DNA from: Anolis carolinensis
Lineage: Eukaryota
Length of the DNA stretch: 64,000 nucleotides
NCBI RefSeq assembly: GCF_035594765.1
Contig: NC_085846.1
Location: forward strand, 20,819,190 to 20,883,189
Direction of reading: 5' to 3'
Positions 7,221 through 64,000 of this stretch are shown piece by piece. The stretch's first letter is position 1, and each line of letters begins with the position of its first letter. The translations under genes and the position numbers were made by a program. The notes under the pieces are model-generated. The model was not told the DNA's origin. It saw only the letters and a program-made list of their open reading frames with translations, and did not search any database.

Positions 7221-7273
<53 letters not shown>
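7221..7273. repeat. (TAA)n microsatellite
   Basis: Pure TAA run. Confidence 0.95.
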
Positions 7274-7572: not shown

Positions 7573-8301
7573 CAGGGGTCCCCAAACTAAGGCCCGGGGG
7601 CCGGATGCGGCCCTCCGAGGTCATTTACCTGGCCCCCGCCCTCAGTTTTATAATATAATATATTGTATATACATATAATATTGATAATAATATTATAATG
7701 TAATACAATATAACACTAATAATAATACCATATAATAATATTAATTATATATTCTATATTACATATAATATTACTAATAATATTACAGTATAGTGGTATA
7801 GTTCAATATAGTAATATATAATGCTAATATTGTGCTATGCTAATAATATAATATATTGTATGTACATATAATTTGTAAGCCACTCTGAGTCCCCTTTGGA
7901 GTGAGAAAAGTGTGATACAAATGTAGTAAATAAATTCAGTAAATAAATAAATAATAAATAAATACGTTTTAGACTTAGGCTCGCCCAAAGTCTGAAATGA
8001 CTTGAAGGCACACAACGACAACAACAACAACAATCCTAATTAACTTGACTATCTCATTGGCCAGAAGCAGGAGCACAGTTCCCATTGAAATCCTGATAAA
8101 TGTATGTTGGGTTAAAATTGTTTTTATTTTTAAATATTGTATTGTTTTTTCATTGTTCTTGTTTTTGCACTACAAATAAGACATGTGCAGTGTGCATCGG
8201 AATTTGTTTGTATTTTTTTTTTTTCCAAATGATAATCCGGCCCCTCAACAGTCTGAAGGATTGTGGACCGGCCCTCGGATTAAAAAGTTTGAGGACCCCT
8301 G
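7573..8301. mobile_element. Non-autonomous hAT transposon (OposCharlie1/hAT-HT-like TIR)
   Basis: TIRs CAGGGGTCCCCAAACT / AGTTTGAGGACCCCTG. Perfect 8-bp TSD CTTTAAGT at 7565-7572 and 8302-8309. Confidence 0.92.
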
Positions 8302-9910: not shown

Positions 9911-10319
9911 CCGTGTTTCCCCGAAAATAAGACAGTGTCTTATATTAATTTTTTCTCCCAAAGATGCTCTAGGTTTTATTTTCAGGGGATGTCTTATTTT
10001 TCCATGAAGAAGAATTCACATTTATTGTTGAACAAAAAAATGAACATTTATTATATATTGTACAGTAGTTGTCATCACAAACCAGCATAACCAGACAAAC
10101 CGAATCCTATCAAGAATTTCTTGTTACTACCATTATTTCTATGTACAATACTCTATGCTAGGTACATTTACCAATCCTGCATGCTCTGTTCATTGGGCAT
10201 GCTTCGAAACAAAAACTTTGCTAGGTCTTACTTTTGGGGGAGGCCTTATATTTAGCAATTCAGCAAAACCTCTACTAGGTCTTATTTTCTGGGGCTGTCT
10301 TATTTTAGGGGAAACAGGG
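9911..10319. mobile_element. Tc1/mariner-superfamily (pogo/Tigger-like) MITE
   Basis: TIRs CCGTGTTTCCCCGAAAATAAGACA / TGTCTTATTTTAGGGGAAACAGGG, TA on both flanks. Confidence 0.85.
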
Positions 10320-11257
10320 TATTAATAATGTAAGTGTATTGAAGTGGTTACAACCATGTTAATCTATCAACTGTAAAATGTTATTATACCCCAAAAGATT
10401 AAAAAGTGAAAAGCTATGTTTTCAAATGTCAGCCTCATGGCTAATTTGGCCTCTAAGGGGAGGGCATTCCACATCTGCATTGTTACAACACAGGGTCATT
10501 TTACACAGCCAAAAATGCTGGCCAGAACCTGCATGTAAAATACCAGATGGCCCATTTGTAACTAGACATGAAAGCCCCTAGCTGCTTTAACTGTGGGCAG
10601 ACGGGTGGGTGTCCATACTCCCCAGGTGTGCTAAATCCTATTTGAAATGGCTGGGGCCCCAAATTTCACCCTTTCTTCCACCCTATCAGTGCCAGCTAAG
10701 GTGAGGATATTGTGACTTACCAGCTTCTCATTGGGAGTTCTTCCTAAAAAGCACCCCCCCCCCCTTGTCCAAAGCTCCTCTGCCAGTCATATGGCATAGA
10801 ATTAGGAAGATTGAGAAGCAGATAGGTCACATTGTCCCCCCACCACATCTGGCAACAATGGTGTGGAGAAGAGTGAGAGAAGACAACCATCTCACATTCC
10901 TAGGCCACCTTAGCCTGGGGAGCATGCTGTGGGTGTGTGTTTCTGTTGAAATACAGGAGAAAGCCTGAATTCTGGTGCAGGCTTTGGGATTTCTCCTGTG
11001 TTTTTATTTTAACCTGGACTGCAGCTACATTAAGTTGTTTTCCCTGGGTTAAAACAGATCAATGTGTGTGTGCTTTTTAGGCACCCATAGGTTAATCTGC
11101 CCCCACACTGACCTAAATAATAAGTGTAGATGGAGTCACATTAGGAATTTTCAGTAACAACAATGCAACCTGTGGTGGTTGTTTCAGAAGGAAGCCTGGT
11201 TGACACCAATAAATTCAGGTGAATTCAAATAGCACTCCAATTAAAATAAAAATTGAA

Positions 11258-11603
11258 AGTGTTGTCAAAGGCTTTCATGACCGGGATCACAGGGTTGTTG
11301 TATGTTTTCCGGGCTGTATGGCCATGTTCTAGAGGTATTCTCTCCTGACGTTTCACCTACATCTATGGCAGGCATCCACATCTATGGATGCCTGCCATAG
11401 ATGTGGGCGAAACATCAGGAGAGAATACTTCTAGAACATGGCCATACAGCCGGATGCCTGCCATAGATGTGGGCGAAACATCAGGAGAGAATACTTCTAG
11501 AACATGGCCATACAGCCGGATGCCTGCCATAGATGTGGGTGAAACGCCAGGAGAAAATACTTCTAGACCATGGCCATACAGCCCGGAAAACATACAACAA
11601 CCC
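11258..11603. mobile_element. Penelope-like element pLTR fragment: one inverted copy plus three tandem 66-bp copies
   Basis: 11294-11377 is the reverse complement of the unit GGATGCCTGCCATAGATGTGGGCGAAACATCAGGAGAGAATACTTCTAGAACATGGCCATACAGCC, repeated at 11386, 11452 and 11518. Inverted/tandem pLTRs are typical of PLEs. Confidence 0.8.
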
Positions 11604-11756
11604 AAAAATTGAAAGGTTTACAGCAAACTTCACAACTTTTCATTTCTTTCTACAGAAACTAATCTTCCTGACTGTGTCTTGTAGGTGGTCCATCTTCAGT
11701 ACACTGATGTCTTACGCCACCTTTCCTGGTTCACTGCTCATGAGGGAGGTCAGCTA

Positions 11757-11935
11757 CAGAGTCATAGAGTTGCAAGAGACCTCATGGGTCATCCAGTCCA
11801 ACCCCCAGCCATGCAGAAAAGCACAATCAAAATACCCCCAACAGGTGGCCATCAAGCCTCTGTTTAAAAGCCTTCTAAGGCAAGGTTTCCACCCCACTCC
11901 CAGGTAGTGAGCTCCACTGTTGAACAACTCTTATT
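11757..11935 (-). mobile_element. CR1 LINE 3' fragment
   Basis: TCATAGAGTTG...GGTCATCCAGTCCAACCCC is the reverse complement of the CR1 3' terminal motif. Confidence 0.7.
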
Positions 11936-12430
11936 GCCATTTTCAGCCATCCCTGGATTGAAGCCTCTTAATGAATGAGATCTTGTGGGCCAACATCTCA
12001 CAAGATTCTATAAACTGAGAAATGTGGGCCAATCATTCTTCAGCTAGAAGCAGAGAAAGGAGGCTGTACTGCCAGAGGACAAACAGTGCTTTTGAGCAAT
12101 GGCCTGCCCAAGCACAAATCTATCAAGGAGGCCAGTATAAGGCAGAGACCTTGAATGGAAAAATATGTGGGGCAGCAACCCAGTCTGGTCAATTTAGAAC
12201 ATTTTGGACAGTGGTGTAGAATAAGAATAGAATGGGAATACTTGGCAATCATGCTTTTGACCCTATTTTCAAAGACATATATTTCAATAGTTTTTCTTTC
12301 TCAAGTCCTGAGAGTAGAGACACATTGAGAAGAATCTGAATGGATCTTGTGTGCAGGAGTCTAGAAGCCTGTGCAGGTTGTAAAGCTTATGTGGAAAAAG
12401 CTTGAGAGACTCTGAAATAATATAGCATGG

Positions 12431-12564
12431 CAATGATTTCCAAACTCATCCTCCAGGTATTTTGAACTTCCACTCCCAGAAGCTCCAGGTGCCTTGGCCC
12501 ATGATCAGGGAATTGGAGAGTTGAAGTCCAGCAAACCTGGAAGACCAGAGTCTGGAAAACATTG
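12431..12564. mobile_element. Degenerate palindromic hAT-like MITE
   Basis: CAATGATTTCCAAACTC...GAGTCTGGAAAACATTG ends with internal self-complementarity; no clear TSD. Confidence 0.5.
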
Positions 12565-13844
12565 TAATAGTGTACAAGGATTATCTGGACATTTCTTTCT
12601 TCTCATGCCATTTTGGTTTAGCATGGCTTGTTTGGTTTTGTCAGACATTCAACAGACAGATTGCTATTGTCTCTTTTTAGGGGATAAATTGTTTTTGTCT
12701 AAAATTTAAAAATCCCCAAAAATCCATTGATGTGTGAATCTTTCTGAAACTTCTGGAGATTGATGTCCTGGTTATCTTGTGCAATGTATATAAATTTCAA
12801 GTATATAAATATTGTATTTTTTAAAAAAAAATGTTTGTAAAAAATTCAAAAATTTCCCTAAAATTAGTTGATGAATGTCATGTTCTAAAATTTGGTGGGC
12901 TAACCGTGGAAATGTGTGGTACAATTAATGTAGCAAGTTTCATCATGATAGCTCTAAAAAGGGAGAAATGAGCCGCCAAAGTTTCCCTGCTTACCCAATT
13001 ACTATAATGAAAAAATAATGAATTTTCATCACTCTTATTATAATATAACAAATATTTTACCAACCATACTTTAGAAACACTTTAGAAATGAAATGCCAAC
13101 ACCTCCCAGTTTTGTAACTACTTTTGAAACATTTTTTATTGATCGTATATGCCTAGTGAGAAGGAATGACAGCTGATATGTGTGACAATAGTAATGAATG
13201 AATGAAATAATTATAATTTTTCAAACTTTTGGGGCAGCTGTAGACTTTGTAGAGACATTCTGAATTCCTCCCCCCCCCCTTTCTACGTTCTTGGCCATTC
13301 TCTAATTAATCATCAAATAAATATTTAAACTGAAGGCAACAAGTATTGCAGTGAAATTGAATAATTTGTGAACAGTAAGATATACAATGACAACAGTTTT
13401 AAACCACTGTAAAGTGTCACCAAGGCTAATTACTTTTAAAAATAACTTTGTACACTTTAATTGATGCCCAATGATACATATGCATATATAACTGATGCTA
13501 TCAACTCTGAGAGTGATGGAAGTGTTATCTCACTGGGACTTTCTTTTTTGAGGGATCATAAGTCTGGATGAGCCAGGTTGCTACTTTCAAAAATGACATG
13601 CCAAATTGGCATAAAGGAAAAGTCAATTGAAAACATGACAAACTAAATTGTTATCTGCACCTCTTGCTCAAGAGGTGCAGAGTGAAAAAGTGAAAGTGAA
13701 AAAGTGAAAAAGAACTGAGTTTTTTTTCCATTTTTTAAACATGGACTCTTTCTTTCACATTATCTGTTACATACATCTTGAATGCATTTATTTTCCTTAA
13801 ATGGAAATAATTGGGAAATAATACACTGTGTGTATTCCTTGGTA

Positions 13845-14150
13845 CAGTAGAGTCTCGCTTATCCAACGTAAACGGGCCAGCAGAATGTTGGATAAGCGAA
13901 TATGTTGGATAATAAGGAGAGATTAAGGAAAAGCCTATTAAACATCAAATTATGTTATGATTTTACAAATTAAGCACCAAAACATCATGTTATACAACAA
14001 ATTTGACAAAAAAAGTAGTTCAATACACAGTAATGCTATGTAGTAATTACTGTATTTACAAATTTAGCACCAAAATATCACAATGTATTGAAAACATTGA
14101 CTACAAAAATGCGTTGGATAAGCGAGTGTTGGATAAGTGAGACTCTACTG
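13845..14150. mobile_element. Tigger-like (Tc1/mariner superfamily) MITE
   Basis: 23-bp TIRs CAGTAGAGTCTCGCTTATCCAAC / GTTGGATAAGTGAGACTCTACTG (1 mismatch), TA TSD. Confidence 0.9.
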
Positions 14151-14303
14151 TATTATCAAAAAAAAAACAACCCCTAATAAACCCAAATTAAAACAGCAAG
14201 GATATGAGTCTCTATGCTCTTAGCTGGATGTAAGTCTCATAGAAATCAGTAGAACTTACTTCTGAGCAGAAAGATATGAGATTGCACCATTGGAAGTTAT
14301 TTT

Positions 14304-15236
14304 TCAGAGGGCAAACCCTTTCCTTCCAAATTGCCTTTTTAAAGCCTCTTTCACCTCCTTATTCCTTAAACTATAGATTAGGGGATTTAGCATTGGGATG
14401 ACAATTGTATAAAACACTGACATTACTTTCCCTTGATTGGGGGATGACATGCCCCCAGGTTGTGCATACATAAAGAAAACTGTCCCAAAGAATAAGCTAA
14501 CTGCCATCAAATGGGAGGTACAGGTTGAGAAGGCTTTATATCTTCCTTTGACAGAAGGCATATGTAAAATAGTAGTCACAATGTAAGCGTAAGACACTAC
14601 AACAATTACAGCTGTGGTGACAATGATAAATCCACATAACACTAGGAGCACCAGTTCATTCACAAATGTATCTGAGCAGGAGGCCTTCATCACAGCTGGT
14701 ACATCACAGAAGAAGTGATTTATTTTGGTTGGCTCACAAAATGACAAACTAAATGTGAACCCCGTTTGGGTACAACAATTGACAAAACCAAAAAGATAAG
14801 AGACACCCATGAGACAAATGCATATTTTCTTCGACATAATGGTGTGGTAGAGCAGTGGGCTACAAATGGCAGTGAACCGGTCATATGCCATTACAGCCAA
14901 GAAAAATGCTTCTGTGGTTCCAAAAAGAGAAAAGAAGAACATTTGTGTGGCACATCCCTTGTAAGAAATGAGTTTGCTCCCACTTGCCAAGGTAACCATG
15001 GCCTTGGGCGTGATGACTGAAGAGTAGCAAATATCCAAGAAAGAAAGGTTTTTCAGGAAAAAGTACATAGGGGTATGGAGGTGGGAGTCAACACTGGTAA
15101 TTATGATCATGCCAGCATTTCCCATAAAAGTGATAATATACATCACCAAAAAGAGGATTAAAAGAACTAGCTGTATGTTAGCTTCATCCTCAAATCCCTC
15201 CAAGACAAATTCAGTGACCTCAGTATGGTTTTCCAT
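14304..15236 (-). CDS. Olfactory receptor (class II, OR5-like), 310 aa [OR-B]
   Basis: NHT sequon, [40 protein letters not shown]. Confidence 0.96.
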   Translation of the reverse strand: MENHTEVTEFVLEGFEDEANIQLVLLILFLVMYIITFMGNAGMIIITSVDSHLHTPMYFFLKNLSFLDICYSSVITPKAMVTLASGSKLISYKGCATQMFFFSLFGTTEAFFLAVMAYDRFTAICSPLLYHTIMSKKICICLMGVSYLFGFVNCCTQTGFTFSLSFCEPTKINHFFCDVPAVMKASCSDTFVNELVLLVLCGFIIVTTAVIVVVSYAYIVTTILHMPSVKGRYKAFSTCTSHLMAVSLFFGTVFFMYAQPGGMSSPNQGKVMSVFYTIVIPMLNPLIYSLRNKEVKEALKRQFGRKGFAL

Positions 15237-17192
15237 GGAGTTGTTATGAAAAGTTTAAAAGCCAGGAAAAAGGATTTTCTATCAATATTCTTGGAAATGC
15301 TGGGTGTGCATTCTTGGGAAGTCAGTTCTGAAAGTGATTGCATACCAGAACCTGAGAAGATAACTATGATAACCAGCATGCTAGTACTACCATGTTTGAG
15401 ATATTATATCACCAGAAGTCTGAAAGAAAGAAAAATTAGAAATTAGAGATAAATAAGTTAGCAAAGGAACAAAACAATATTCATAATTGACATTACTGAG
15501 ATACTTAAGAATCTTAAAACTTATGCAAAAAGATTCACCCAATCACACTCCGCCCTTATCTGGTATAACATTTGGTCCTACAGAAAGCAGTTGAACCCTA
15601 ATGAGTTAATTCTGTTGCTGAAAGCTGTGCTTGTGAATAAAGTTAATAAAAAGCTTCATATTTTAAGGGTGCTGTTCTGGGTGTCCTAGATAACGAACAA
15701 ACAGCCTGCTACTAATAGCTTACTAAAAGAAGGAAACAGAATGGAAAAAAAATATTATTTTCAAAAAACCCAATAAACATTGTCAGATGTAAACAAGTGA
15801 TGGCAGCAAAGGAAAACCACAAAGAAATAGGTTTAAAGCATTTGTTTCCAAGAGGAGAGGGCAGAACTGAATTCTAATCATGGCTGGAAAGATATTTCAC
15901 AGTACTCAACATCTGGTGGAAACAATATTTTTTTTCTCCTATCTGGAACTTGTGAGAAAATGCACATCTAATTTTCACATTTGCAAGGCAGTTTCTGAGA
16001 AATGAAGTATGAACCAAGGAATGTGCATATTTAAAAGTACTGTTTATAATAAAATGTGCTGAATTTAAAGGGAACGAGACCCCCGGTTTAGATAATACAG
16101 GAACGTTGAGTAAATTAGATAAACTGTGCAAATGAATAGAGCACTTATGAAAAAATATATGAAGAAGTCCAAGTGTGGGAGGAAAATTCAAAGTACCATA
16201 ACATGATATACAAAAAGGATAAGAAGAAAGTGCAGGTAGAATGCAGAGAAAAACAACAAAATCAATTCTGAGATATTTTTCCATAAGCAAGCAAGCAAAG
16301 ATTTGATAAATAAAGAAGTATCACTGGAATAAAGGAATGGAAGAACAAGAGATTGCATGAGAAAGATAGAGAGGATCAATGGCTTGTACTGAGTTGAATG
16401 GCAATCTATTTTTGAGTGCTGATGTGTAATATTCAAATGGCTATATGTTAATAAATCATTACAATTTTTAAAAATGCAAGAAAAGAATGAAATGCAAGAT
16501 AACCCATTACATCTCCAGATCTCTAGATATGTTAATCTGTTTCAGTAAAAAGTAGAATATTATGACACTTTAAGAAGAATAAACACATTTTGTTTTATAC
16601 TTTCATAATCTAAAGTCTTTGGTACTCCAATGTCTTCTCTCAAACTTATCAATCTATAGAAGGCAGAACTGTCCAGTAGAGTTGTTTATTCCACCTTTAG
16701 GCATGCATAGTAGCTTTTAGTCTAAATTTTAAATAAATAACTCAAGATGCTGAAACCTATCTTCAGAATAGGATAAGTATCTTGGATAATGCTCATAATG
16801 GACAACCACCACTTACAATGTGACTAGTTTGCTTGGCAGGATATACATATGCATCTGGAATGGCAAATAAGGCTTTGATGGGGTGTTTCTGCATGGCCCT
16901 TGTAATCTCTGCCAACTCTAGGTCTTCCAATAAATCTCAGTATGTATACATTTGTGATCAAGTTTTTTGGATTTGATTTAATATAATACATTTGACCAAA
17001 AAAAAGACATGCAAGCCTGATCTTTAAGACATCTATAGCAGATGTAGCTTACCTATACAGACACTGGTATATCATAACTCCCATCATCTAGAACTAATGT
17101 ACAAGCTGGAAAGGTCTGATGGGAGTTGGTCCAAGAGTATTTTGAGGGCTAAGGAAACTTCACCTCTCCAATTACTGCTGGAAGGATGGTAG

Positions 17193-51745: not shown

Positions 51746-52983
51746 CTGCGATATAGTGACATATGCACTATTTAGCCACCTAAAGGGTTGGAAAATGACC
51801 ACTGCTACAATTATATTAGTTATAGCCATTCTGGTAGATAGCCCACATGATTCTATCATTGGGCATACTTTTGAGATCCTTATTGTTTCATAAGCTAAGG
51901 TACTATAGCACTGTTGCATAATATAAGTCTCTTCATGAAGACATTTTCATTAATTGTGCTATGTGACTGCTTTGTTAAATCGCACTAATACACATCAAAA
52001 ACAAAGCAATTAATGTGCATTAGAATGGAGTCAAATATTTGTAAACCTCTATGTAGCTGTGCCTCCAAGATGGCTCTGATTTATGGTAATCCTATCCTTG
52101 GATTTTGTTGGCCAGGTTTATTCAAAAGAGGTTGTCTCTTGCCTTTCTCCTAGATTGACAGAATGTGATGTCCAATGCCACCCAGTGGCTCTGGAGGAAT
52201 TTGAACCATGGTCAACTCAGTATCCTAGGACCTCATCACATTGTCTTCAGGAAACATTCTAGGATGCTTCTAAGATGCTTCCTCACCGGAGCCAATCTTA
52301 TGATGCAAAGCAACTTTTGGTGGAGCTCCAAACAGAAAGCGTTCTGTTCGGAGAACACAGGAGGCTTCCCATGTTCTCATTCGACAGTACGGGGCCAGTG
52401 CGGGGGAAAGCTGGGCAGCAATGCTCCCTTCTGTGAAATGGAAAAGGGGATGATGCGGGGCATGGAGCAATGGGTTCCCCATGCTACCCAATGAATGCCC
52501 CCACTGTTCCCCAGGTTCAGGACTTCAATGTGATGAAGTCCCTAGTAAAGCAGCCAAAGCACTACATCATGCTGGCTGCTGAGCTTCCATGTGTGATGCT
52601 AAGATTAGCAAGCACTGCCATGCAAAATGGCACTGTATGTAAATTTTACATCTCCATCAGTCAGAAATATCCTACCAGTTCTGCAGTGGAACTCACAAAT
52701 GCATGTGACCCTTTGCTCTGGATTATTCTGCACTATATACTGCCCTACAAAGTACTAATATACTGAGGGTTCTTAACAGTTCAAAGTGAGCAAAAATTGT
52801 TCAAATACTTTGATTTTTATTTTCCATAACACATTTTCTTAAATAAAGAAACAAGATGGGACAAACATTTTAAAACAAGCAAACATGGAAACTACCATAT
52901 ACAAACTGAAGACATCTACATGTTCTTTAAAGATTCACAAATCAGGCAGTACAATTGTAAAATGAAAGCCTTATCTAGAAACT

Positions 52984-53219
52984 TCACATTGGAAAAAGGT
53001 TCTCCTTAGCAGTCTCATCAAGGCATCTTTCACTTCCTTGTTCCTTAAACTGTATATTAATGGATTCAGCATTGGAATTACAATGGTGTAAAAAAAAAAA
53101 AGACACCACTTTGCCTTGGTTAGGAGAAGGTTGGCCATACATAAAGAAAGCAGTCCCAAAGAAGAAACTTACAGCAGTGACATGGGAAGAACATGTTGAG
53201 AAAACTTTGTGTTTTCCTT
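52984..53219 (-). pseudogene. OR pseudogene (TM6-TM7/C-terminus of an OR-C paralog)
   Basis: [11 protein letters not shown]...FFMYGQP and [26 protein letters not shown] are in different frames (+4 A-run expansion). 12-bp deletion; the 5' three quarters are missing. Confidence 0.92.
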
Positions 53220-53369
53220 GGGCACAAAGTATGTAAAAAAGAAAGATTCCAATGCTTCCCCCCATTTGTTTGAATGGATCAAGAAAGTCCAAAGTTAAAC
53301 ACCGAAATAATAAAAATAGCAATAAAAATAGCTGTGAAACTACCTCTCCCCATTTTGGAATATTCTGCA

Positions 53370-53576
53370 CTTTGGCCTAGATCTGTGTATTAGTCTCTTG
53401 TTTTTAACATTTTATGCTGTATGTTGATTTTAATGACTGTTTTATTGATGCTGATGTTTTTATTGTTGGGATATTTGTTTTATTGTTTTGTTGTTATTAT
53501 ATTGTGGTATTGGGCAAGGCCCCATGTAAGCCACTCCAAGTCCCTTCAGGGAGATGGGGCGGGGTATAAAAATAAA

Positions 53577-53868: not shown

Positions 53869-54020
53869 CCTGAAGCAAGGGAGCAAAGGTGGCTTCTTGC
53901 TTCCTCAACTTCTCTGGGAACCCAACTATTGCTTGAGTTCAGCAGCAGGCTTAAATACTCAGCCTGAAGCAAAGGAACAAAGGTGGCTTCTTGCTTCCTC
54001 AACTTCTGTGAGAACCCAAC
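53869..54020. repeat. ~57-bp direct repeat x2 (period ~95 bp) upstream of the FN2 gene
   Basis: CTGAAGCAA.GGA.CAAAGGTGGCTTCTTGCTTCCTCAACTTCT.TG.GAACCCAAC at ~53869 and ~53964. Confidence 0.85.
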
Positions 54021-54029
54021 AGGGGACAG

Positions 54030-54037
54030 GATAAAAA
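54030..54037 (+). promoter_or_regulatory. TATA-like GATAAAAA for the FN2 gene
   Basis: About 55 bp upstream of the ATG of the signal-peptide exon. Confidence 0.35.
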
Positions 54038-54090
54038 GGAATGAGTGAACTCTCAATTCTTCATATTTGTCCAATCAACTCTGAAAGGAG

Positions 54091-54157
54091 ATGGCCTCTA
54101 TTGTCAACTCTCTCTTGTGCTTCTGGACTTTCCTATCACTGCTGAGAGCAAACGAAG
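54091..54157 (+). CDS. Putative first coding exon: signal peptide MASIVNSLLCFWTFLSLLRA-NE (phase-1 donor)
   Basis: Strong Kozak GAGATGG, hydrophobic core, L-R-A cleavage-like site, AAG|GTAAGG donor; phase compatible with the downstream FN2 exons. Confidence 0.7.
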
Positions 54158-55565
54158 GTAAGGAATATTTCAGTTAGTATTCATGGTTCAGTTAACCTGT
54201 TTTAGTAATAAATCTCTGACTTCTGCTATCAGAAGTTCTGGCAAGTTATTTTGCAGTGGCTTTGCCTAAAGTAGGATAAAGTCTATCTAAAGCAAAACAA
54301 AACAAAACAAAAACACCCTAAATAAAACATGGGACAATTATCTTTAGTGACAGTGCATGGTGAAGAATACCAGAGGTACATTTGGGGTGAGAACACTTTT
54401 TTCTCATGTTTTCAAACCCTTGGTCTTCTGTCCTGCCATACTTGTGGACCAGAGGTTTCACTTAATTGTTTCTTGATTGTTACAGGATTTCACTTCATTT
54501 CTCCACCATTGACCTGAATCTTTCTGATTTGACCCCATGAATTTCAAAATTAATTCTGTCCTCAGATCATATGCAATTTACTTGTTGGTTCCTTTCCATC
54601 TTGCTATCCTTTGTTAGCAGAAAAATCACACATACTTATAACAAACTGGACATGATTCTCTATATGATGGTGTCAATGTTTCATTTTATGCTCTTTCTTT
54701 TCTTTTTTGCTGTGGCATATGTGTACTTCTAAAATCTTTTATAGATTAGCTGCCTTCCTCATGAGAAGTTCACTACAACTGCCAGTAAAATCATGTGGAA
54801 TTTTCTTCTACGTGCTCTCATTTGGACAGGTGCATGGATAAAATTCTACACTGAAGGAATTTTAATTCAACATGCATTCATTCACATCAAGATTCTTTCC
54901 CCAGTATCTTAGTTTTACACATGTTCATTTAAAACACATCTGAGGAACTGCACAATTAAAAGGCAAATGTTAGTGCATTTGGGGAAGGTAATAGAAGGCG
55001 CTGAACTTTTTTAAAAAAATAAATGACAATGAAATACAGTATTACAAAATTCATATATTTAAAAATGGAGGGAACAACTGAATTCTGAATGCATTGATTA
55101 CACTTCTGACCAGGAAAAAGTGTGCTAATCTTCCAACCTTTTTCCTGGTTGTGTAGGTGCCTTTGTTGATGTTAGAGTTGGGGACTTGAGATGGCCAGAG
55201 ACTCACACAGATCTCTGTTGCTGGCTGGCTGCCTGGGAATGGTGATGATTGTGATATGGGCATGTTCTGTCTCCATTCCACAGCATGCGTAACTCCCTGT
55301 GTGGACAGTTGACCAGTTTAACTCAGTCCCAGTCTAGCTGTTTATTCTGCCCAGAAGCCACAGAACACTAGGGAGTTTCAAACAACTTCCTGAGTACAAA
55401 CCCAGTAGCAGATAGACAATTTAACCTAGTATAATCTATGATACTCATTGGAAATAGGGGTATGTTGTGAAAACAGCTTGGATGCAACTCAAGGAGAATA
55501 TGGGCATTAATCTCTCTATAGATGAGCCCTGAATCTGACCTTTTCTGGAAAGCAAGGAAACATTA

Positions 55566-56243
55566 GGCGGTTCCAGACAACAGTAAAGTCTGCTTCAACC
55601 CGGGTTTAAAAAACCCGGGTGTAGTCTGCACACTGCCCCAAAAGCCCATGCTTTCCATGGGTGCTGTCTACATGTCCTCATGGTATCTACCGGAAGAACA
55701 TGGAGACAGCCCCCACCCCCACCCAAAACCCCTTAAAATGGAGGAAAACAGTAAAAAATAACTTACTGGGCTCCATTAGGTCTCACAGCTCAGTCCCTGG
55801 AATGTACCATTATATGCGAAAAATTGCTCCTGCCTCCCCTTTGGTTTTTCGCCCATAGTGGTACATCCCAGGGACTGTGCTGTGAGACCTAATGGAGGCC
55901 AGTAAGTTATTTTTACTTACTATTTTCCCCATTTTTAAGGATTTTGGGAGGAGGAGAGGGCACTCTTGCACCTTCTGGCCTCCAAGAAGGTGTGAGATGG
56001 GTGTTTGGACAGGCCACAGGGAAGTCCCAGGATTCTCCGTGGGCCTGTCCACACAAGACCATTGTCTATTAGACTCAGTCCTTTCAGAAAGGTGCATGTC
56101 TAATGGGCTATCAAATTAATTCACTGCAGACCAGGGTTTCCTGGTTTGCAGCGAATGAATTCATTTGTGTGTAGTACGTCATCTGGATGGCCCACTTTAA
56201 AGTGCGGGAACTCCCGCTTTAAAGGGGTTGTCTGGATACTCCC
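55566..56243. mobile_element. Harbinger-like MITE with long internal inverted repeat (~55725-55950)
   Basis: GGCGGTTCCAGACAAC / GTTGTCTGGATACTCCC ends; arms of about 95 bp around a short loop. Confidence 0.6.
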
Positions 56244-57202
56244 ATAGTCAACTCAATAAATTTTGAAGGATATTGAAAATGCAACAGAGATATCTTCAGG
56301 AAAACAATCACAGATAGGATTTTTTTTAAAAAAAAACTTTTCCTTACATGCCTTTTTCTTCTCGCAACCCAGCAATGGCCCCGAGGATGTCCTTCGGTGT
56401 CCCTTTTATTTATCTTTAGTTTTGGGTCCATAATATAAGAATGTGGGGAAACTATCAAGACCTTTCTCTTTCTGGCTTATTCTTCCTTGTAAATACTTTC
56501 TACTCTAACATTGGTGTTCCAAATGATGCCTAAAGTTAAAATGAATTCCTTCGGGACAAAGCAGGAAAACCCTGCTTTGGAATAAAGTGCCAGGAATAAC
56601 TCTCTTCCCCTAGCAAGGATACTGATTATGCAAGTTAGAGGTCTCTGAAGGCACATCCACACAGGATGGAAAATGCGCACCATTCTTGATTTTTACCTGG
56701 GACGTCCAAATGACGCCTCAGGTAAAAACAAATTCCTTCAGCACAAAGCAGGAAAACCCTGCTTTATATCAAAGTAATTTAACAGCTAGAAAGACACAGG
56801 TCCTTCAGAAGACCTGGGTCTTTCCAGCTGTGGGCGCTGCGTGAATTGGGCCAGGGGATCGCGTCTCATGAAACCTGGCCCCAATCCACACAGCTGTCTT
56901 GGGATTTCTGGGCTCCTTGACCCCAAAAACCAAGACAGCCCCCTCCCCTCACAAAACCCCTTAAAAACCCTACAAGGAGCATCTGTACACCCTTTCCCCA
57001 GGAAAGTACAGGTTGGCGCAAACTTCTTCCCTGTCTGGAACTGGCCTGAATTTTAGTCCAAAAAAATAATACTTGTGACCTCTGGTAGTAATTCTCCCTT
57101 ACAAATTATAAATTTAATTCCTCAGTGCAATTCTTTTTTTTTTTTTTGCAAAATTCACATTAATGTATTTTACGTTTATGACTCCTTTCCCTATCTCCAA
57201 AG

Positions 57203-57346
57203 GAAAGCCCTGCGTCTTTCCCTTCATCTACAGAGACCGCACATTCCATACTTGCACCAATGAGAACTCAGAAGATGGGAGATTTTGGTGTGCTACAACA
57301 GGAAACTATGACAAGGATAAGCAGTGGAGATATTGTGCTGAGTCAA
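57203..57346 (+). CDS. FN2 domain exon 1 (144 bp, phase 1-1, derived acceptor)
   Basis: KPCVFPFIYRDRTFHTCTNENSEDGRFWCATTGNYDKDKQWRYC; CTCCAAAG| acceptor, A|GTAAGT donor. Confidence 0.7.
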
Positions 57347-58556
57347 GTAAGTCAGAAATAAAAGACAGGAGAGAAAAACTGGGACATTTTAAAAGCAGCT
57401 GAAAGAATGGAGGAATAATTTGGACTTTTCCAGCTAAATTGGGACAGGTAAAGGGGTGTGCACACTTTTGTAAAACTATTAATTGTAGGCCAGTATGAGA
57501 TTATCAGCTCTCTTGTTTCTACCTAGGATAAAGATGAACTAGGAAAATTAGTAAAAGAGGTTGATATATTCCACTCCAAACTAATTGAAGTGGGTAATAT
57601 GTGTTCATACATTTACTCCTCTCTCTTTCCTCAGATCTCAGATTTGCAAATTGACTACCACCAAAATTCCCTTCCTTCAGAACAAGTTAACATGACAATC
57701 CCAAAAGGCTCCAGGAATCATGATATCCATGCATACTTTTATTTATATTAAAGCTTTTCCACAGTTTAGGGTGCAAGGCAGCTTCAACACACATACAAAT
57801 ACAGTGAAGACACATTTAGTTAAAAACATACAAAAGCTGAAATTAAACCAGCATTCCTTTAAAACAAAGCACACAGTTTCCAGGATGCCTTGTTTTAATT
57901 TATCTTCTTGTTTCAGCGGAAGAGGATGAGGCCACATCTACACTGCCATATAAAATCCAGATTATCTGCTTTGAACTGGATTATTTGGCATTGTAGACTC
58001 ATATAATCCAGTTCAAAGCAGATAATGTGCCTTATCCAATTTGATAATGTGGATTACATTGCAGTGTTTATCCAACCTGATAGGAACTACTGCTTCTTCT
58101 GGGAAACAGGGAGTTGATTCCTGGGCCTCTTCCACATAGCTGAATAAAATCCCATATTATCTGCTTTGAAATGGAATATATGGCAGTGTGTACTCAGATA
58201 GCAAAGGGCCCTTCCACACAGCCATATCACCCAGAATGTCAAGGCAGGAAATCCCACATGTTCTGATTTGAATTGGAATATATAGCAGTGTGGACACACA
58301 GATAACCCAGTTCAAAGCAGAAAATGTGGGATTTCCTGCCTTGATATTCTGGGTTATAGGTCTGAGTCTGCTTAGATTTCAAGACTGAAAGGGTGCTAAT
58401 GTCTTTAAGATATCGAGACACCTACAGCTACCTCTTAATAAATCCAAGGTTAAAGAGGTGGGAAGGCAAAAGAGACCAACCAAAGATGAAGGTCAAGGCA
58501 CTGGACCCTCTACAGCAGTTATTTTTAATTTCTTTCTTTCTCTCTCTCCCTCTCTC

Positions 58557-58596
<40 letters not shown>

Positions 58597-58600
58597 GAAG

Positions 58601-58756
58601 GTAACTCCAACGGCAAGCCCTGCGTCTTTCCCTTCATCTACAGGGACCATACATTCCACACTTGCACCAATGAGAACTCAGAAGATGGGAGATTTTGGTG
58701 TGCTACAACAGGAAACTATGACAAGGATAAGCAGTGGAGCTATTGTACTGATTCAA
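58601..58756 (+). CDS. FN2 domain exon 2 (156 bp, phase 1-1)
   Basis: (CT)n TATGAAG| acceptor, C-x-FPF-x-Y...C...WC...Y...W-x-YC FN2 pattern, A|GTAAGT donor. Confidence 0.88.
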
Positions 58757-58851
58757 GTAAGTCAGAAAAAGGGACAGGAGAGACAAAATTGGAACATATT
58801 AAAAGTAGCTGAAAAAATGAAGGAATAATTTGGAGTTTTCCAGCTACAATA

Positions 58852-59290
58852 GGGCCTCTTCCATACAGCTGAATAAAATCCCACATTATCTGCTTTGAAA
58901 CTGGGATATATGGCAGTGTGGGCTCAGATAACCAAGTTCAAGACAGATACTGTGGGATTTTCTGCCTTGATATTCTGGGATACAGGGCTGTGTGGAAGGG
59001 CCCTGGAACAGGTAAAGGAAAATAGATTATCTGCTTTGAACTGGATTATATGGCAGTGTGGACTCAGATAACCCAGTTCAAAGCAGATATTGTTTGATTT
59101 TCTGCCTTGATATTCTGGGTTTTATGGCTGTGTGGAAGGGCCCTCCGTTCAAGGTAGATATTGTGTATTATCTGCCTTGATATTCTGGATTATATGGCAG
59201 ACTGGAAGAGCCCTCAGGCACAGCTGAATAAAATACCACATTATCTCCTTTGAACTGGAATATATGGCAGTGCGGACTCAGATAACCCAG
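58852..59290. mobile_element. Cluster of short palindromic GGGCCCTTCCACACAGC-type MITE pieces (also ~57928-58360 and ~63533-63719)
   Basis: Repeated ATTATCTGCTTTGAACTGG...GGCAGTGTGGACTCAGATAACCCAGTTCAAAGCAGAT self-complementary units. Confidence 0.65.
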
Positions 59291-61193
59291 TGGCAAAAAG
59301 TTCCATGAAAAGAGAAGTGGGGAGGTCCATACTGGCTGGTAAATCAATGGCCAGACCAGAATAGAAATTACAGCCATGTGTATTCTGCTTAACCCACTGT
59401 GGTGTCATGATATCTACATAGTTCAACTGGGCTGAGACTGCATCAGCCTTATTGGACCATCACCTCACCTATTGGGCCACCATTGCCGATCTTCCCACCT
59501 TTGTCCTGGTCATGTGTGTCCCGCTACTGAAGGGACACCATACCAGAAATAACTCACACAAAGTTCTGTAGATGTCTAGAAGTGGTGACAGTGACAAACC
59601 ATGGCCAGGGAGAATGGGATGGTGATGGTGTCTTAACTGGACAGAGGACAAGCTTGAATTGGACCAGATCCAGCTGTTCCCACTGACCCAAAGCTGTGGA
59701 ATACTCCAGAGTTTCTTGAACATCCCAGACCATTTCCCCAAATTTCTTGAAGTTAAACAAAGCTGCTGTCACCCAGGATACTCCACACACTTCATTAAAA
59801 GTGCTGCAATGTTATGATTCAGGGTATTCAGGGTAAATCTGATTTTCTTTTTTCATGCAGATTCACTGCAGATAGAAAAAGTTACATTATTGAAATAAAG
59901 TGACCAAATTCACTCCCTCTCCCCAGCAAGGATACTGATTATGCAAGCTAGTGGTCTCTGATGGCGTATCCACACAAGGTGGAAAATGCGCAGCCTCTTG
60001 CATTTATATCTGGAGCGTCCAAATGACACCTCAGGAAAATCTAATTCCTTTGGCACAAAGCAGGAAAACCTTGCTTTGTGTAGAAATAATTAGACAGCTG
60101 GAAAGACCTGGGTCTTTCAGAAGACCCAGGTCTTTTCAGCTGTGGGCGCTGTGTGGATTGGGCCAGGGAATCGCATCACCTGATTCTGGCCTAAATCCAC
60201 ACAGCTGTCATGGAATTTTTCAGCTCCTGGAGCCCAAAAACCCAAAGAGAGCCCCCACTCCCTCCCAAATCACCTTTTAAAAACCAAAATACTTACCCAG
60301 TCAGCATTTCTCTGTCCCTGGCCCTTTCCTGGCACATGTACATGACGCACCAGGAGAAGATGGGTAGGAAAATCGCTTCTGCCCCCCCTTCTCCTGATGT
60401 GCCATTTCTATGTGCCAGGAGAAATGTGGCTGCAGGGGGATGCTGGGGGTTTTTCTTTTGTGTCTGAGTGCCCTTCCGGAAGGTGCAGGAAGGCATCTGG
60501 ACACCCCCCCCCCCACACACACACACACATACACATAGCAAAGCGCAGGCTTTCGAGCCAGTGTGGGGACAGAAGGCTGCCGTAACCCGGGCTTTTTAAA
60601 CCTGGGTCACTGCGGACTTCTTCCCTGTCTGGAACTGGCCTGAGCTGTAGTCCAAAGAAGAAATATTTGTGACCTCTGATAGTAATCTTCCCTTACAAAT
60701 TATATAGTTGATCCCTCAAAATAATTCCATTTTTGTGAAATTCACATCAAAGTATTTTATGTTAATGACTCCTTTCCTTATCTCTATATTTGTTATATGA
60801 CAACTCCACACAGATTTTTAAAAAAATCTCTAGATATATATGTTGTGCCTATTTTTCAAATATAAGTTTTAATGTATGGTGGTGTCCCACTGACTAAAGT
60901 GTACTGTGTGTGTGTGTGTGTGTGTGTGTGTCATTTGTTCCTATGAAATATAGCACGTAGAACCCAGTACTCATTGGTGGTCTCCCATCAGGGCTCAGCC
61001 TCCTTAGATTTCAATACTGCAAGTGATCTAATGTCTTTAAGATATCTGATCACCTACAGCTACCTCTTAATAAATCCAAGGTTAAAGAGATGGGGTGGTA
61101 AGAGAGAGCAACCAAAGATGAGGGTCAGGGCACTGGACCCTCTACACCGTCTTTTTAAATTTCACCCTCTCTCTCTCCCTCTCTTTTATGAAG

Positions 61194-61349
61194 GTATCTC
61201 CAACGGCAAGCCCTGCGTCTTTCCCTTCATCTACAGAGACCGCACATTCCATACTTGCACCAATGAGAATTCAGAGGGTGGGAGATTTTGGTGTGCTACA
61301 ACAGGAAACTATGACAAGGACAAGCAGTGGAGCTATTGTGATGATTCAA
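61194..61349 (+). CDS. FN2 domain exon 3 (156 bp, phase 1-1)
   Basis: Same splice signals and FN2 motif as exon 2. Confidence 0.88.
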
Positions 61350-62995
61350 GTAAGTCAGAACAAAGGACAGGAGGGAAAACTGTTTTAATTTCTCCTTCTT
61401 GTTGCAGTGGGAGAGGCTGAGGCCCCATCTACACTGCTTTGAATTGGATTATATGGCAGTGTAGATCAAACCTGATAGGAACCACTGCTTCTTCTGGGAA
61501 ACAGGGAGTTGACATAGAAATGACATGCTAGAAGCAGGGAGGAGGAAAATCGTTCCTGCCCCCCTTTCCTGGCATGTGATTTTTATGTGCCAAGAGAAGG
61601 TCAGCAGCTGGGGTTTTTCTCTTTTGTTTCCAGTTCCCTGCCAGAAGGTCCAACAGGCATCTGGACACCCCACCCGTAAAACGCAGGCTTTCGGGCCAGT
61701 GTGGCATTAGAAAGCAGCCCTGATAAGAGTATTTTTAAATCCCTGGTCAGTGCGATTTTCTACTCTGTCTGGAACAGGCCTGAGTCTTAGACCAAAGAAG
61801 TAACATTTGTGACCTCTGATATTAAACCTCCCTTACCAATTATATATTTCATCCATCAGAGTAATTCCTTTTTTGGGGGGCAAGAGTCCCCCCAAAAATA
61901 TCAAAATATTGTATGTTTATGTCTCCTTTCCCTATCTCTATATTTGTCATATGACAACTCCACACAGATTTTTTAAAAATATATATATCTGTGGGCGCTG
62001 TGTGGGTTGAGCCAGTGGACCGCATTGCATGATACCTGGCCCCAATCCACACAGCTGTCTTGGGATTTTTGACCTCCTGGAGCCCGAAAATCCAAGACAG
62101 CCCCCACCCCCTCCCAAACCCCCTTAAAACACTAAAAAGAAAACAATACTTACCCGGCCAGCATTTCTCTGCTGCTGGCCTTATCCTGGCATATTAAAAT
62201 GATGTGCCAGCAGAAGGGGTGGGAAGAAAATTGCTCCTTCCCCACCTCTCCTGGCATGTCATTTCTATGCGCCAGGAGGGGGTCAGCAGCAGGGAAATGC
62301 CAGCTGCATAAGTAATTTTTAATTTTAAGGCCTTTCTGTGGGGTTTTCCTTTAAGTCTGGAAGGGCATGTGGACAACCCCCTCCCCAAGAAAACATAGGG
62401 TTTCAGGCCAGTGTGGGGACTGCAGGCTGCTGTTACACAGGGTTTTTTTTTGAACCTGGGTCAGCACAGACTTCTTCTCTGTCTGGAATTGGCCTGAGTT
62501 GCAGTCCGAAGAAGTAACACTTGTGACCTCTGATAGTAATCCTCCCTTACAAATTATCTATTTAATCCCTCAAAGTAATTTCTTTTTTTAAAGAAATTCA
62601 CATCAATGTATTTTATGTTTATGTCTCCTTTCCCTATCTCTATATTTGTTATATGAAAACACCACATAGATTTTTAAACATAATAATAATAATAAAATCT
62701 CTAGATATATATGTTGTGCTTATTTTTCAATGTATGTGTCTCACTGACTAAAGTGTGCTTCAGATATATATATAAAGTCATTTGTTCCTATGAAATATAG
62801 CATGTAGCACATAGTATTCATTGATGCTCTCCCATCAGGGCTGAGCCTGCTTTGATTTCAAGACCAAAAGGAAGCTAATGTCTTTAAGATATCTAGACAC
62901 CTACAGATACCTCTTAATAAGTCCAAGGTTAAGAAGTGGGAAGACAAGAGAGACCAACCAAAGATGAGGGTCAGGGCATTGGACCCTCTACAGCG

Positions 62996-63027
<32 letters not shown>

Positions 63028-63033
63028 ATGAAG

Positions 63034-63189
63034 CATACTCCAACAGCAAGCCCTGCGTCTTTCCCTTCATCTACAGGGACCGTACATTCCACACTTGCAC
63101 CAATGAGAACTCAGAAGATGGGAGATTTTGGTGTGCTACAACAGGAAACTATGACAAGGATAAACAGTGGAGCTATTGTGCTAGTTCAA
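63034..63189 (+). CDS. FN2 domain exon 4 (156 bp, phase 1-1)
   Basis: (CT)n CATGAAG| acceptor, FN2 motif, A|GTAAGT donor. Confidence 0.88.
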
Positions 63190-64000
63190 GTAAGTCAGAA
63201 AAAGGGACAGGAGAAATAAAATTGGAACATTTTAAAAGCAGCTGAAAAAAAATGGAGGAATACTTTGGACTTTCCCAGCTACATTGGGACACATTTGTAA
63301 AACTGTTATTTGTAGATCAGCATGTGTTTATCAGCTCTGTTGTTTCTAGCTAGCATAAAGATGAATTAGGAAAAGAGGTTGATATATTCCACTCCAAACT
63401 AATTAAGTGGGCAATATGTGTTCAGACCTTTAGTCCTCTCTCCTTCCTCAAATCTCAGGCCCCTGCGTTATATGGCAGTGTAGATCCAACCTGATAGGAA
63501 CTACTGCTTCTTCTAGGAAGCAGGGAGATGATTCCTGGGCCCCTTCCACATAGCTGAATAAAATCCCACATTATCTCTTTGAAATGAAATATATGGCAGT
63601 GTTGACTCAGATATCTCAGTTCAAAGTAGATATTGTGGGATTTTCTGCCTTGATTTGTTGTTTCAAATCAGATAATCTGGATTCAGAAGCTGGATTATAT
63701 GGCAGTATAGATGGGGCCTCAAATTACCTAAATGATGGCACGTCCACATCTTTAACTATAGATCTGTTCCAACTGCCGACAAGGGCTTTGTTTTAATTTT
63801 TAATAAGAATTTTTTAAAATGATAAATATTAGGGATGTGCAATTTTTTGTTAGTCGTCATAAGTCATATCAAATTCTTTACATTTGTACTTACAATGCAA
63901 TATTTGGTGCTGGCATGGACTTAAAACTTAAAAATCCAAACTTACGCAATATGTTTTTGTTTGAATTTTTTTAAATCTCGGAATCCTCCCAAGGTCAGTT

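What the first reader, a model, noticed from the sequence alone, without database searches (positions are those of the whole stretch)
54091..63189. Secreted FN2-only protein gene undergoing recent tandem exon expansion (BSP/ELSPBP1-like architecture in a lizard)
Seen: a 67-nt signal-peptide exon missed by the ORF track, then four FN2 exons. All have phase-1 junctions and splice in frame (67+144+156+156+156 nt, ~226 aa, no stop). The Cys-to-Cys cores differ by only 1-2 residues. Intron blocks are duplicated too (e.g. CTGTCTGGAAC..GGCCTGA...GTGACCTCTG at ~57030, 60625, 61765, 62478; CTAATGTCTTTAAGATATC at ~58397, 61029, 62876). Known: signal peptide plus only FN2 domains defines the mammalian binder-of-sperm proteins (2 FN2) and ELSPBP1 (4 FN2), which bind choline phospholipids; FN2 in MMP2/9 and fibronectin binds gelatin. 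Inference: I see no MMP propeptide or catalytic exon before the FN2 exons, so this looks like a multivalent secreted binder whose valency is changing by unequal crossing-over. If so, its four repeats arose independently of ELSPBP1's divergent four.
Basis: partly seen in the sequence, partly recalled or inferred. Interest (0 to 1): 0.82.

Follow-up and report, generated by a model that had tools for sequence, protein, structure and literature searches.

The report
Anole FN2-repeat gene, partial duplicate
The green anole carries a real gene-like unit, a signal-peptide exon plus four nearly identical fibronectin type II exons; it is a partial copy of a neighbouring, already annotated sperm-binding-protein-like gene whose one internal exon was multiplied, which is an ordinary event in a family that does this often in lizards and snakes.

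Summary
There is an ATG/signal exon (54091-54157) and four FN2 exons (57203-57346, 58601-58756, 61194-61349, 63034-63189). All sit between AG and GT, all are phase 1, and each matches Pfam fn2 at E about 1e-20.

It is not a new kind of gene. RefSeq already calls it 'epididymal sperm-binding protein 1-like' (XP_062813219.1), but that model lacks the signal exon and translates intron sequence.

I traced its origin. The core promoter, exon 1 and intron 1 match the 5' end of an FN2-only gene about 375 kb away (XP_016851302) at about 81% identity. Every FN2 unit matches that gene's sixth FN2 exon plus its upstream intron. So this is a chimeric partial duplicate whose single 'B-type' exon was amplified four times.

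The amplification is not very recent: flanks differ by 9-26%. The exons are more conserved than their flanks and have no indels or stops, which suggests past purifying selection.

No further FN2 or protease exon lies before the next olfactory receptor gene. No terminal exon was found, all four acceptors are the weak AAG type, and four probable RNA contig sets gave no splice evidence.

FN2-only proteins with 1-9 FN2 matches (a simple pattern count that includes partial models), some with near-identical internal repeats, are common in squamates.

The parts
54014..54090 (+). Core promoter and 5'UTR copied from the parent gene, with a TATA-like GGATAAAAAGG at about 54029-54039
   Evidence: Aligns with the parent locus (L005) directly upstream of its ATG. 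Homology begins near 54013, and the whole aligned stretch window 53990-54175 (this segment plus exon 1 and the donor) has 87% mean column identity.
54091..54157 (+). Exon 1: ATG plus a 22-codon signal peptide, donor AAG|GTAAGG, phase 1
   Evidence: Purine at -3 and G at +4 around the ATG, an in-frame stop upstream, and a hydrophobic core at residues 4-18. It is 71% identical to the signal exon of P0032/P0173 and 55% identical to that of Gekko P0014. Nucleotide homology to the parent's exon 1 is shown.
54158..57202 (+). Intron 1. Its first 2.4 kb is colinear with the parent gene's intron 1
   Evidence: blastn: 54014-54679, 54675-55176, 55425-55563 and 56338-56517 match L005 5924-9420 at 73-87%.
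57203..57346 (+). FN2 exon E2 (144 nt). It is 12 nt shorter at its 5' end and uses a new acceptor, ccaaag|GA
   Evidence: Pfam fn2 E 9.6e-21. About 264 nt of the parent's sequence (L005 22297-22560), including the old acceptor, is missing, because the block 57075-57196 abuts the exon.
58601..58756 (+). FN2 exon E3 (156 nt)
   Evidence: Pfam fn2 E 3.4e-20. The unit 58385-58796 matches L005 22341-22751.
61194..61349 (+). FN2 exon E4 (156 nt). Its unit keeps the longest colinearity with the parent and is probably the founder copy
   Evidence: Pfam fn2 E 3.6e-20. 59397-59961, 60640-60802, 60965-60995 and 61017-61379 match L005 21640-22742 in order. It is the copy most diverged from the others.
63034..63189 (+). 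FN2 exon E5 (156 nt), the last FN2 exon. It still carries the internal-exon donor CAA|GTAAGT
   Evidence: Pfam fn2 E 1.6e-20. No FN2 exon follows up to window-equivalent 73245.
63190..63245 (+). Possible read-through tail (stop at 63243-63245). AATAAA lies at 63215 and 63557
   Evidence: The read-through translation is open for 18 codons, and both RefSeq models end this way. No homologue of a family terminal exon was found downstream.
61543..61992 (+). Partial repeat unit without an exon, lying between E4 and E5
   Evidence: 60366-60843 matches 61543-61992, and 61656-61981 matches 62364-62682.
57016..57197 (+). Duplicated intron block, also present at 60616-60784, 61758-61938 and 62464-62640
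Evidence: Self-blastn gives 74-82% identity. It derives from L005 22159-22313.
58358..58600 (+). Duplicated block directly upstream of the exon, also present at 60990-61193 and 62837-63033. It ends in a (CT)n or CT-rich pyrimidine tract and the AAG acceptor
   Evidence: Self-blastn. Identity over the 230 nt upstream is 83-91%.

Best explanation
This is a lineage-specific paralogue of the green anole's ELSPBP1-like (FN2-only, 'ESP-like') gene cluster. A partial duplication copied two pieces of the gene encoding XP_016851302/XP_016851303, which lies about 375 kb away on the same chromosome. One piece was the core promoter, signal-peptide exon and intron 1. The other was that gene's sixth FN2 exon (a 'B-type' FN2) with about 0.9 kb of its upstream intron. 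The copy landed inside an olfactory receptor cluster. Unequal crossing-over then multiplied the FN2 unit to four exon-bearing copies plus one copy without an exon. The original CAG acceptor was lost and replaced by an in-frame AAG acceptor 9 nt downstream; in E2 a further deletion moved it again. If spliced as the phases allow, the product is a secreted protein of about 226 residues or more, made of four almost identical FN2 domains. Each domain keeps the aromatic pocket residues that bind phosphorylcholine in PDC-109 and that form the ligand pocket in gelatin-binding FN2 domains. It would therefore act as a four-site binder of one ligand type (a choline lipid head group or a collagen-like ligand), gaining strength through avidity. 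Shown here: the anatomy, the origin, the amplification and the sequence constraint. Inferred: secretion, ligand and tissue. Unknown: whether it is expressed, and how the transcript ends.
For: Anatomy and FN2 identity. Signal exon: homologous to family signal exons. Origin: blastn colinearity with L005 for the 5' end (681 nt at 80.8%, E 1e-175, and 520 nt at 80.6%) and for every FN2 unit with the parent's exon-6 region and its intron. Domain tree: E2-E5 group with the parent's domain 6 (SH-aLRT 83) inside the B-type group (92), whereas true MMP9 FN2 domains form a separate starred clade. Extent of the gene: no other FN2 or MMP exon up to the next OR gene. Constraint: exon divergence is 3.5-10% against 9-26% in the flanks. 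There are no indels, stops or lost cysteines in about 600 nt of exon. pN is 0.035 against pS of 0.04-0.27. dN/dS to the parent exon is about 0.45. Of 8 amino-acid differences from the parent's exon, 6 are changes on the parent's side and only 1 on this gene's side. Pocket residues: the PDB alignment coordinates, combined with the residue numbers in PMC2823774, map Y75, W93, Y100, W106 and Y108 of PDC-109 onto Y, W, Y, W and Y in all four repeats.
Against: There is no RNA support. Four probable RNA contig sets gave zero cover on E3-E5 and no splice joints. No listed run that holds the sequence is on record as RNA. All four FN2 acceptors are AAG, and A at -3 is uncommon (my own knowledge). No terminal exon was found, so E5's donor has nothing known to splice to. 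Both RefSeq models and the UniProt models are makeshift, with no signal exon and translated intron, as expected when transcript evidence is missing. Only about 77 nt upstream of the ATG was copied. The constraint tests rest on short exons, with only about 25 synonymous sites.
Confidence: 0.6

Rival explanations
1. It is a non-functional or barely expressed relic. The partial duplicate has open exons only because it was constrained in the past or is not old enough to have decayed, and it produces no stable spliced mRNA today.
For: There was no cover on E3-E5 and no joints in four contig sets. The acceptors are weak AAG sites and the ancestral CAG is lost. No terminal exon was found. The annotation models are makeshift. 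Only a short promoter segment was copied. One repeat unit has already lost its exon, and E2 has suffered a deletion.
Against: Four exons have stayed free of stops, indels and cysteine loss despite flank divergence of 9-26%. Exons are 1.5-4 times more conserved than flanks, and few amino-acid changes fall on this lineage. All eight splice borders remain AG/GT. The E2 deletion kept both frame and phase. The tissues of the four runs are unknown.
Confidence: 0.3
2. An originally mixed four-FN2 gene (A-B-C-B types, as in its relatives) was homogenised by gene conversion, rather than one exon being amplified.
For: The exons are more alike than their flanks, a pattern that conversion tracts centred on exons could produce.
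Against: The introns next to every exon are also homologous to each other, and all map to the same single intron of the parent (L005 21640-22560). A tblastn search of the window found no A- or C-type FN2 remnant. Synonymous divergence between copies (0.04-0.27) is similar to flank divergence.
Confidence: 0.05
3. The exons are the FN2 part of a larger gene (a gelatinase, a lectin-type receptor or similar) whose other exons lie elsewhere.
For: By PDB sequence search, the best single-domain match is the third FN2 of MMP9 or MMP2. The window ends 811 nt after E5.
Against: True MMP9 proteins hit only the FN2 exons, both in the window and in L003, which runs 9 kb past the window end. The next called gene is an olfactory receptor. 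Identity to B-type FN2 domains of FN2-only proteins is 60-84%, against 41-51% to MMP9. The 5' end is a signal exon spliced in phase straight to FN2, as in the parent.
Confidence: 0.02
4. The repeat array is an assembly artefact, produced by over-expansion or collapse of a shorter or longer array.
For: Tandem units of 1.3-2.6 kb carrying interspersed repeats are difficult to assemble.
Against: The copies differ from one another by 3.5-10% in exons and more in introns, so they are not duplicated reads. An older RefSeq protein holds the same four distinct exon peptides. Contig sets from four studies hold about half of the sampled words of the stretch.
Confidence: 0.03

Closest known systems
Anolis carolinensis FN2-only gene encoding XP_016851302.1/XP_016851303.1 ('fibronectin isoform X1' / 'ELSPBP1 isoform X2'), CM069372.1 21.25-21.27 Mb
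   Same: It has a homologous core promoter, signal exon and intron 1 (about 81% identity). Its sixth FN2 exon and the preceding intron are the source of every repeat unit here.
   Different: The parent has 7-8 FN2 domains of three alternating types and a last FN2 exon that carries the stop codon. The window gene has only B-type copies, shifted acceptors and no known terminal exon.
Mammalian ELSPBP1 (HE12), a signal peptide plus four FN2 domains
   Same: A secreted, FN2-only protein with four domains in tandem and phase-1 exons. RefSeq names the anole gene after it.
   Different: The four ELSPBP1 domains are of different types and fall in different parts of the domain tree. The anole's four are copies of one type. 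Orthology and synteny with the mammalian locus were not tested.
BSP1/PDC-109 and other binder-of-sperm proteins (two FN2 domains)
   Same: The aromatic residues that hold phosphorylcholine in PDC-109 are all present in each anole repeat.
   Different: BSPs have two domains and an N-terminal extension. They are reported in mammals in the phylogeny I read, and that study did not include reptiles (PMC4557993). PDC-109 matches the anole exon only over the Cys core, residues 6-48 of 51, whereas MMP9 and MMP2 align over residues 1-50. No binding was tested.
Reptile 'ESP' proteins (ESP-Vkom1 of Varanus, ESP-Cyl-1 of Cylindrophis) and other squamate ELSPBP1-like / 'fibronectin-like' / 'MMP9-like' FN2-only predictions
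   Same: They belong to the same family: signal peptide plus FN2 domains only, and the squamate models inspected have 2-9 FN2 domains. Recent internal duplications are also seen in Pantherophis, Heteronotia, Pogona, Naja, Crotalus, Candoia and Hemicordylus. [quoted passage not shown]
   Different: Most mix three domain types in A-B-C modules. The anole gene is a four-copy array of one type. The nearest parallel is Pogona P0106, which has three C-type domains, two of them 98% identical.
FN2 inserts of gelatinases MMP2/MMP9
   Same: They give the best PDB sequence match per domain (57-58 bits), including the short N-terminal lead-in.
   Different: There are no propeptide, catalytic or hemopexin exons, and true MMP9 FN2 domains form a separate clade.

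Membership tests
Fibronectin type II domain (Pfam PF00040) | Profile match above the curated cut-off, covering the whole 42-position model with four cysteines | tested here: met
   All four exons score 72-74 bits against a cut-off of 22.2, covering profile positions 1-42. All 16 cysteines are present.
Fibronectin type II domain (Pfam PF00040) | One domain per phase 1-1 exon | tested here: met
   The same layout is seen in the paralogue's gene on L004.
ELSPBP1/BSP-type secreted FN2-only proteins | N-terminal signal peptide | tested here: inconclusive
   Exon 1 has a hydrophobic core, a small residue at -1 and clear homology to family signal exons. No signal-peptide predictor was available, and no transcript links exon 1 to E2.
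ELSPBP1/BSP-type secreted FN2-only proteins | No domain other than FN2 | tested here: met
   No MMP exon and no extra FN2 exon lie in the window or in the 9 kb beyond it, and the flanking called genes are olfactory receptors. A general Pfam scan of the downstream ORFs was not run.
ELSPBP1/BSP-type secreted FN2-only proteins | Descent from a recognised family member | tested here: met
   Nucleotide colinearity, introns included, with the gene of XP_016851302. The nearest proteins are all FN2-only ELSPBP1-like predictions.
ELSPBP1/BSP-type secreted FN2-only proteins | Binding of choline phospholipids | not testable with these tools
   Only the pocket residues could be checked. They are conserved, but gelatin-binding FN2 domains share them.
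ELSPBP1/BSP-type secreted FN2-only proteins | Expression in epididymis or male accessory tissue | tested here: inconclusive
   Four contig sets of unknown tissue showed no exon cover on E3-E5 and no joints.
ELSPBP1 orthologue (strict sense) | Four different FN2 types in fixed order, and conserved gene neighbourhood | tested here: not met
   All four domains are B-type copies. The locus sits in an olfactory receptor cluster. Synteny of the parent cluster was not examined.
Gelatinase (MMP2/MMP9) | Propeptide, zinc catalytic domain and hemopexin exons around the FN2 insert | tested here: not met
   tblastn with three catalytic-domain-bearing MMP proteins hit only the FN2 exons.

The most novel reading that the evidence does not exclude
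This is a working young gene. It was born in the anole lineage by partial duplication plus exon amplification, and purifying selection has kept it intact. It encodes a secreted protein with four identical binding sites. Together with the single-type FN2 arrays seen in Pogona, elapids and vipers, it would show that squamates repeatedly adjust the number of binding sites of sperm- or secretion-associated FN2 proteins by single-exon amplification.
Probability: 0.35. Interest if true: 0.5.

Novelty: new member of a known kind. Interest (0 to 1): 0.3.

Why it matters
The practical gain is a corrected gene model for a mis-annotated RefSeq gene: a signal exon is added and translated intron is removed. 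The locus is also a clear, datable example of gene birth by partial duplication followed by exon amplification. If the gene is expressed, it offers a natural comparison between a four-site binder of one type and its mixed-type parent, in a family that is linked to sperm membrane binding in mammals and has hardly been studied in reptiles. It does not open a new class of system. FN2-only proteins, their expansion in reptiles and their internal duplications are already recorded in databases and, briefly, in the literature.

Tried and rejected
- **Gelatinase reading:** rejected.
- **More FN2 exons beyond the window:** none up to window-equivalent 73245.
- **A- or C-type FN2 remnants in the introns:** none.
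- **Homologue of a family terminal exon downstream of E5:** none by blastn with the P0033 gene. A terminal exon of only a few codons could not be detected this way.
- **RNA evidence:** the run search listed no holder on record as RNA. It showed no exon-border joints among the rows printed and did not cover exon 1.
- **Exact-sequence look-ups:** these failed for P0001, P0002 and P0032. P0173 and P0060 worked.
- **Earlier-findings search by words:** nothing found.
- **Paper searches:** the RefSeq accessions gave nothing, and 'epididymal sperm-binding protein' with 'lizard' gave nothing relevant.
- **Domain extraction:** a first pattern cut domains at the wrong cysteines and was replaced.
- **Steps not run:** Exons were searched one at a time by reference, and junction codons were read from the exon ends. 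The large representative-protein search and structure prediction were also skipped, because the word search, Pfam and the PDB sequence search had already settled the family.


Full report
**1. Observation**

On the + strand there is an ATG exon at 54091-54157 (67 nt, donor AAG|GTAAGG). Four exons follow at 57203-57346 (144 nt), 58601-58756, 61194-61349 and 63034-63189 (156 nt each). Each is preceded by AG and followed by GTAAGT. Every junction is in phase 1. The split codons, read from the exon ends, are GGA, AGT, AGT and ACA, so none is a stop. Each of the four exons matches Pfam fn2 (PF00040) over the whole profile at E about 1e-20. Their Cys-to-Cys cores differ pairwise by one or two residues. 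A tblastn search found no other FN2 copy in the window.

**2. Place**

The window is identical to GCA_035594765.1, chromosome record CM069372.1, over the 16.8 kb compared, and lies at about 20.82-20.88 Mb. The first 53 kb of the window is an olfactory receptor cluster on the minus strand. The next called gene after the FN2 exons is another olfactory receptor, 5.2 kb past the window end.

**3. Already annotated, but poorly**

A word search with an open reading frame covering E4 returned XP_016851287.1, and a later search returned XP_062813219.1. Both are named 'epididymal sperm-binding protein 1-like [Anolis carolinensis]', and both contain the four exon peptides exactly. Both models:
- start at an ATG inside intron 1 (57178);
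- lack the signal exon;
- translate intron pieces;
- end by reading through E5's donor to the stop at 63243-63245.

**4. Family**

The nearest proteins are FN2-only predictions from snakes, lizards, turtles, ratite birds and monotremes. Their automatic names vary: ELSPBP1-like, MMP9-like, fibronectin-like, and ESP-Vkom1 / ESP-Cyl-1. Across the 173 proteins fetched, a simple pattern count found 0-9 FN2 matches, though many are partial models.

In squamates three domain types alternate:
- A type;
- B type, which has a Glu-Tyr-Gly-Gly-Asn-Ser-like lead-in;
- C type, which has Trp-Cys-Ser-Leu-Thr.

Near-identical internal repeats occur in Pantherophis, Heteronotia (a whole three-domain module), Pogona (three C-type domains, two of them 98% identical), Naja, Crotalus, Candoia and Hemicordylus. 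The skink Lerista has a signal exon followed by about ten FN2 exons. Hargreaves et al. [quoted passage not shown] A mammalian BSP phylogeny (PMC4557993) does not cover reptiles.

**5. Origin**

The anole's main cluster lies about 355-375 kb away on the opposite strand. It holds the gene for XP_016851302/3 (L005) and, next to it, the gene for the five-FN2 'ELSPBP1' protein (L004).

blastn shows the following matches:
- Window 54014-55176, and further pieces up to 56517, are colinear with L005 5924-9420. That stretch covers 77 nt of core promoter with a TATA-like box, the 5'UTR, exon 1, the donor and intron 1. Identity is about 81% (E 1e-175).
- Every FN2 unit matches L005 21640-22751. That is the parent's sixth FN2 exon (B type), about 0.9 kb of the intron before it and about 30 nt after it, at 73-86%.
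- E4's unit keeps the longest colinear match and is probably the founder copy.

The locus is therefore a chimeric partial duplicate: a 5' end plus one internal exon, with that exon then amplified.

**6. Changes at the acceptors**

In the parent the exon begins after CAG. In E3-E5 that AG is gone and a (CT)n or CT-rich pyrimidine tract precedes a new AAG| acceptor 9 nt further in, which keeps the phase. In E2 a deletion of about 264 nt of the parent's sequence removed this acceptor as well, and another AAG| site 12 nt further in is available.

**7. Timing**

| Comparison | Divergence |
|---|---|
| Copies, 144-nt exon core | 3.5-7.6% |
| Copies, whole exons | 6-10% |
| Copies, synonymous sites | 4-27% |
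| Copies, flanking introns | 9-26% |
| Copies vs parent exon, synonymous | 0.23-0.28 |
| Copies vs parent, introns | about 19-27% |

The first amplification step is therefore about as old as the duplication itself. The youngest pair (E3/E5) is perhaps a third to a half as old. 'Recent' holds only in a relative sense. 'Undergoing' could not be tested. One unit between E4 and E5 has lost its exon.

**8. Constraint**

- Exons are 1.5-4 times more conserved than their flanks. Fisher p ranges from below 0.0001 to 0.32, depending on the pair.
- There are no indels, stops or lost cysteines in about 600 nt of exon.
- pN is 0.035 in every pair.
- dN/dS to the parent exon is about 0.45.
- Polarising the eight core amino-acid differences with 16 other B-type domains puts six changes on the parent's lineage and one on this gene's lineage.

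This points to purifying selection for much of the gene's history. The exons are short, so the tests are weak.

**9. Against function**

- All four acceptors have A at -3, which is uncommon (my own knowledge).
- E5 keeps an internal-type donor, but no terminal exon was found. In the P0033 gene a tiny terminal exon follows the last FN2 exon, and nothing like it was detected here. The alternative is an 18-codon read-through, with AATAAA at 63215 and 63557.
- No listed run that holds the stretch is on record as RNA.
- The one read-laying run allowed (57195-63194, four contig sets guessed to be RNA) gave zero cover on E3-E5 and no exon-border joints among the rows shown. Interspersed repeats dominated the output.
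- An unexplained depth of 13-77 lies on 57195-57594 (E2 and the following intron) in all four sets. This could be a transcript that ends after E2, but I could not follow it up.

**10. Relation to known FN2 proteins**

- By PDB sequence search, the best single-domain match is the third FN2 of MMP9 or MMP2 (57-58 bits). PDC-109 follows at 55 bits.
- In a domain tree of 122 domains and 44 columns, which is poorly resolved, E2-E5 group with the parent's domain 6 (SH-aLRT 83) inside a B-type group (92).
- True MMP9 domains form their own starred clade, and the mammalian ELSPBP1 domains are scattered among other types.
- True MMP proteins hit nothing but the FN2 exons.

They arose inside an ELSPBP1-like family, not from scratch.

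**11. Mechanism (inferred)**

I combined the alignment coordinates (query 6-48 against PDC-109 68-109) with the residue roles given in PMC2823774. This maps the phosphorylcholine-contacting Y75, W93, Y100 and W106, and the rim residue Y108, onto Tyr, Trp, Tyr, Trp and Tyr in every anole repeat. Gelatin-binding FN2 domains have the same pocket, so the ligand cannot be decided from sequence. Four equal pockets on short linkers would bind by avidity.

**12. Verdict**

The object is a mis-modelled but already named member of a known, repeat-prone family. Its origin is now explained, and its function remains unproven.

Noticed in passing
window 57195-57594: All four laid contig sets show summed word depth of 13-77 and 7-28 on E2 and the intron just after it, while E3-E5 show none. 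Possible causes are a transcript ending after E2 (compare UniProt model P0019), an olfactory receptor 5'UTR exon, or a low-copy repeat.
   Followed up: no
window 57923-58367, 58845-59291, 61434-61465, 63535-63719: A high-copy palindromic, MITE-like interspersed repeat fills parts of the introns. It reaches word depths of 1e4-1e5 in the contig sets and flooded the joint and loose-end tables.
   Followed up: partly
window 58540-58592 and 62990-63020: (CT)n microsatellites lie directly upstream of the E3 and E5 acceptors. They are the only polypyrimidine tracts there and replace the sequence that held the parent's CAG acceptor.
   Followed up: partly
window 53870-53925 and 53963-54020: A direct duplication of about 50 nt lies just upstream of where homology with the parent's promoter begins.
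   Followed up: no
window 5422-47989 (minus strand), 52971-53370: Seven intact olfactory receptor ORFs of 310-355 aa, plus broken receptor-like ORFs next to the FN2 gene. A LINE reverse-transcriptase ORF lies at 393-2915.
   Followed up: no
L002 (Lerista edwardsae) 1127-16300: A signal exon is followed by about ten FN2 exons over 15 kb. The annotators split this into two genes, and it may be one long FN2 array.
   Followed up: partly
P0129 (Heteronotia), P0003 (Pantherophis), P0106 (Pogona): Whole modules or single FN2 domains are repeated at 98-100% identity within one protein. This suggests very recent exon duplication, or assembly duplication, in other squamates.
   Followed up: partly
L004 19121-20011: A further FN2-only gene starts right after the anole five-FN2 'ELSPBP1' gene, so the main cluster holds at least three genes.
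   Followed up: no
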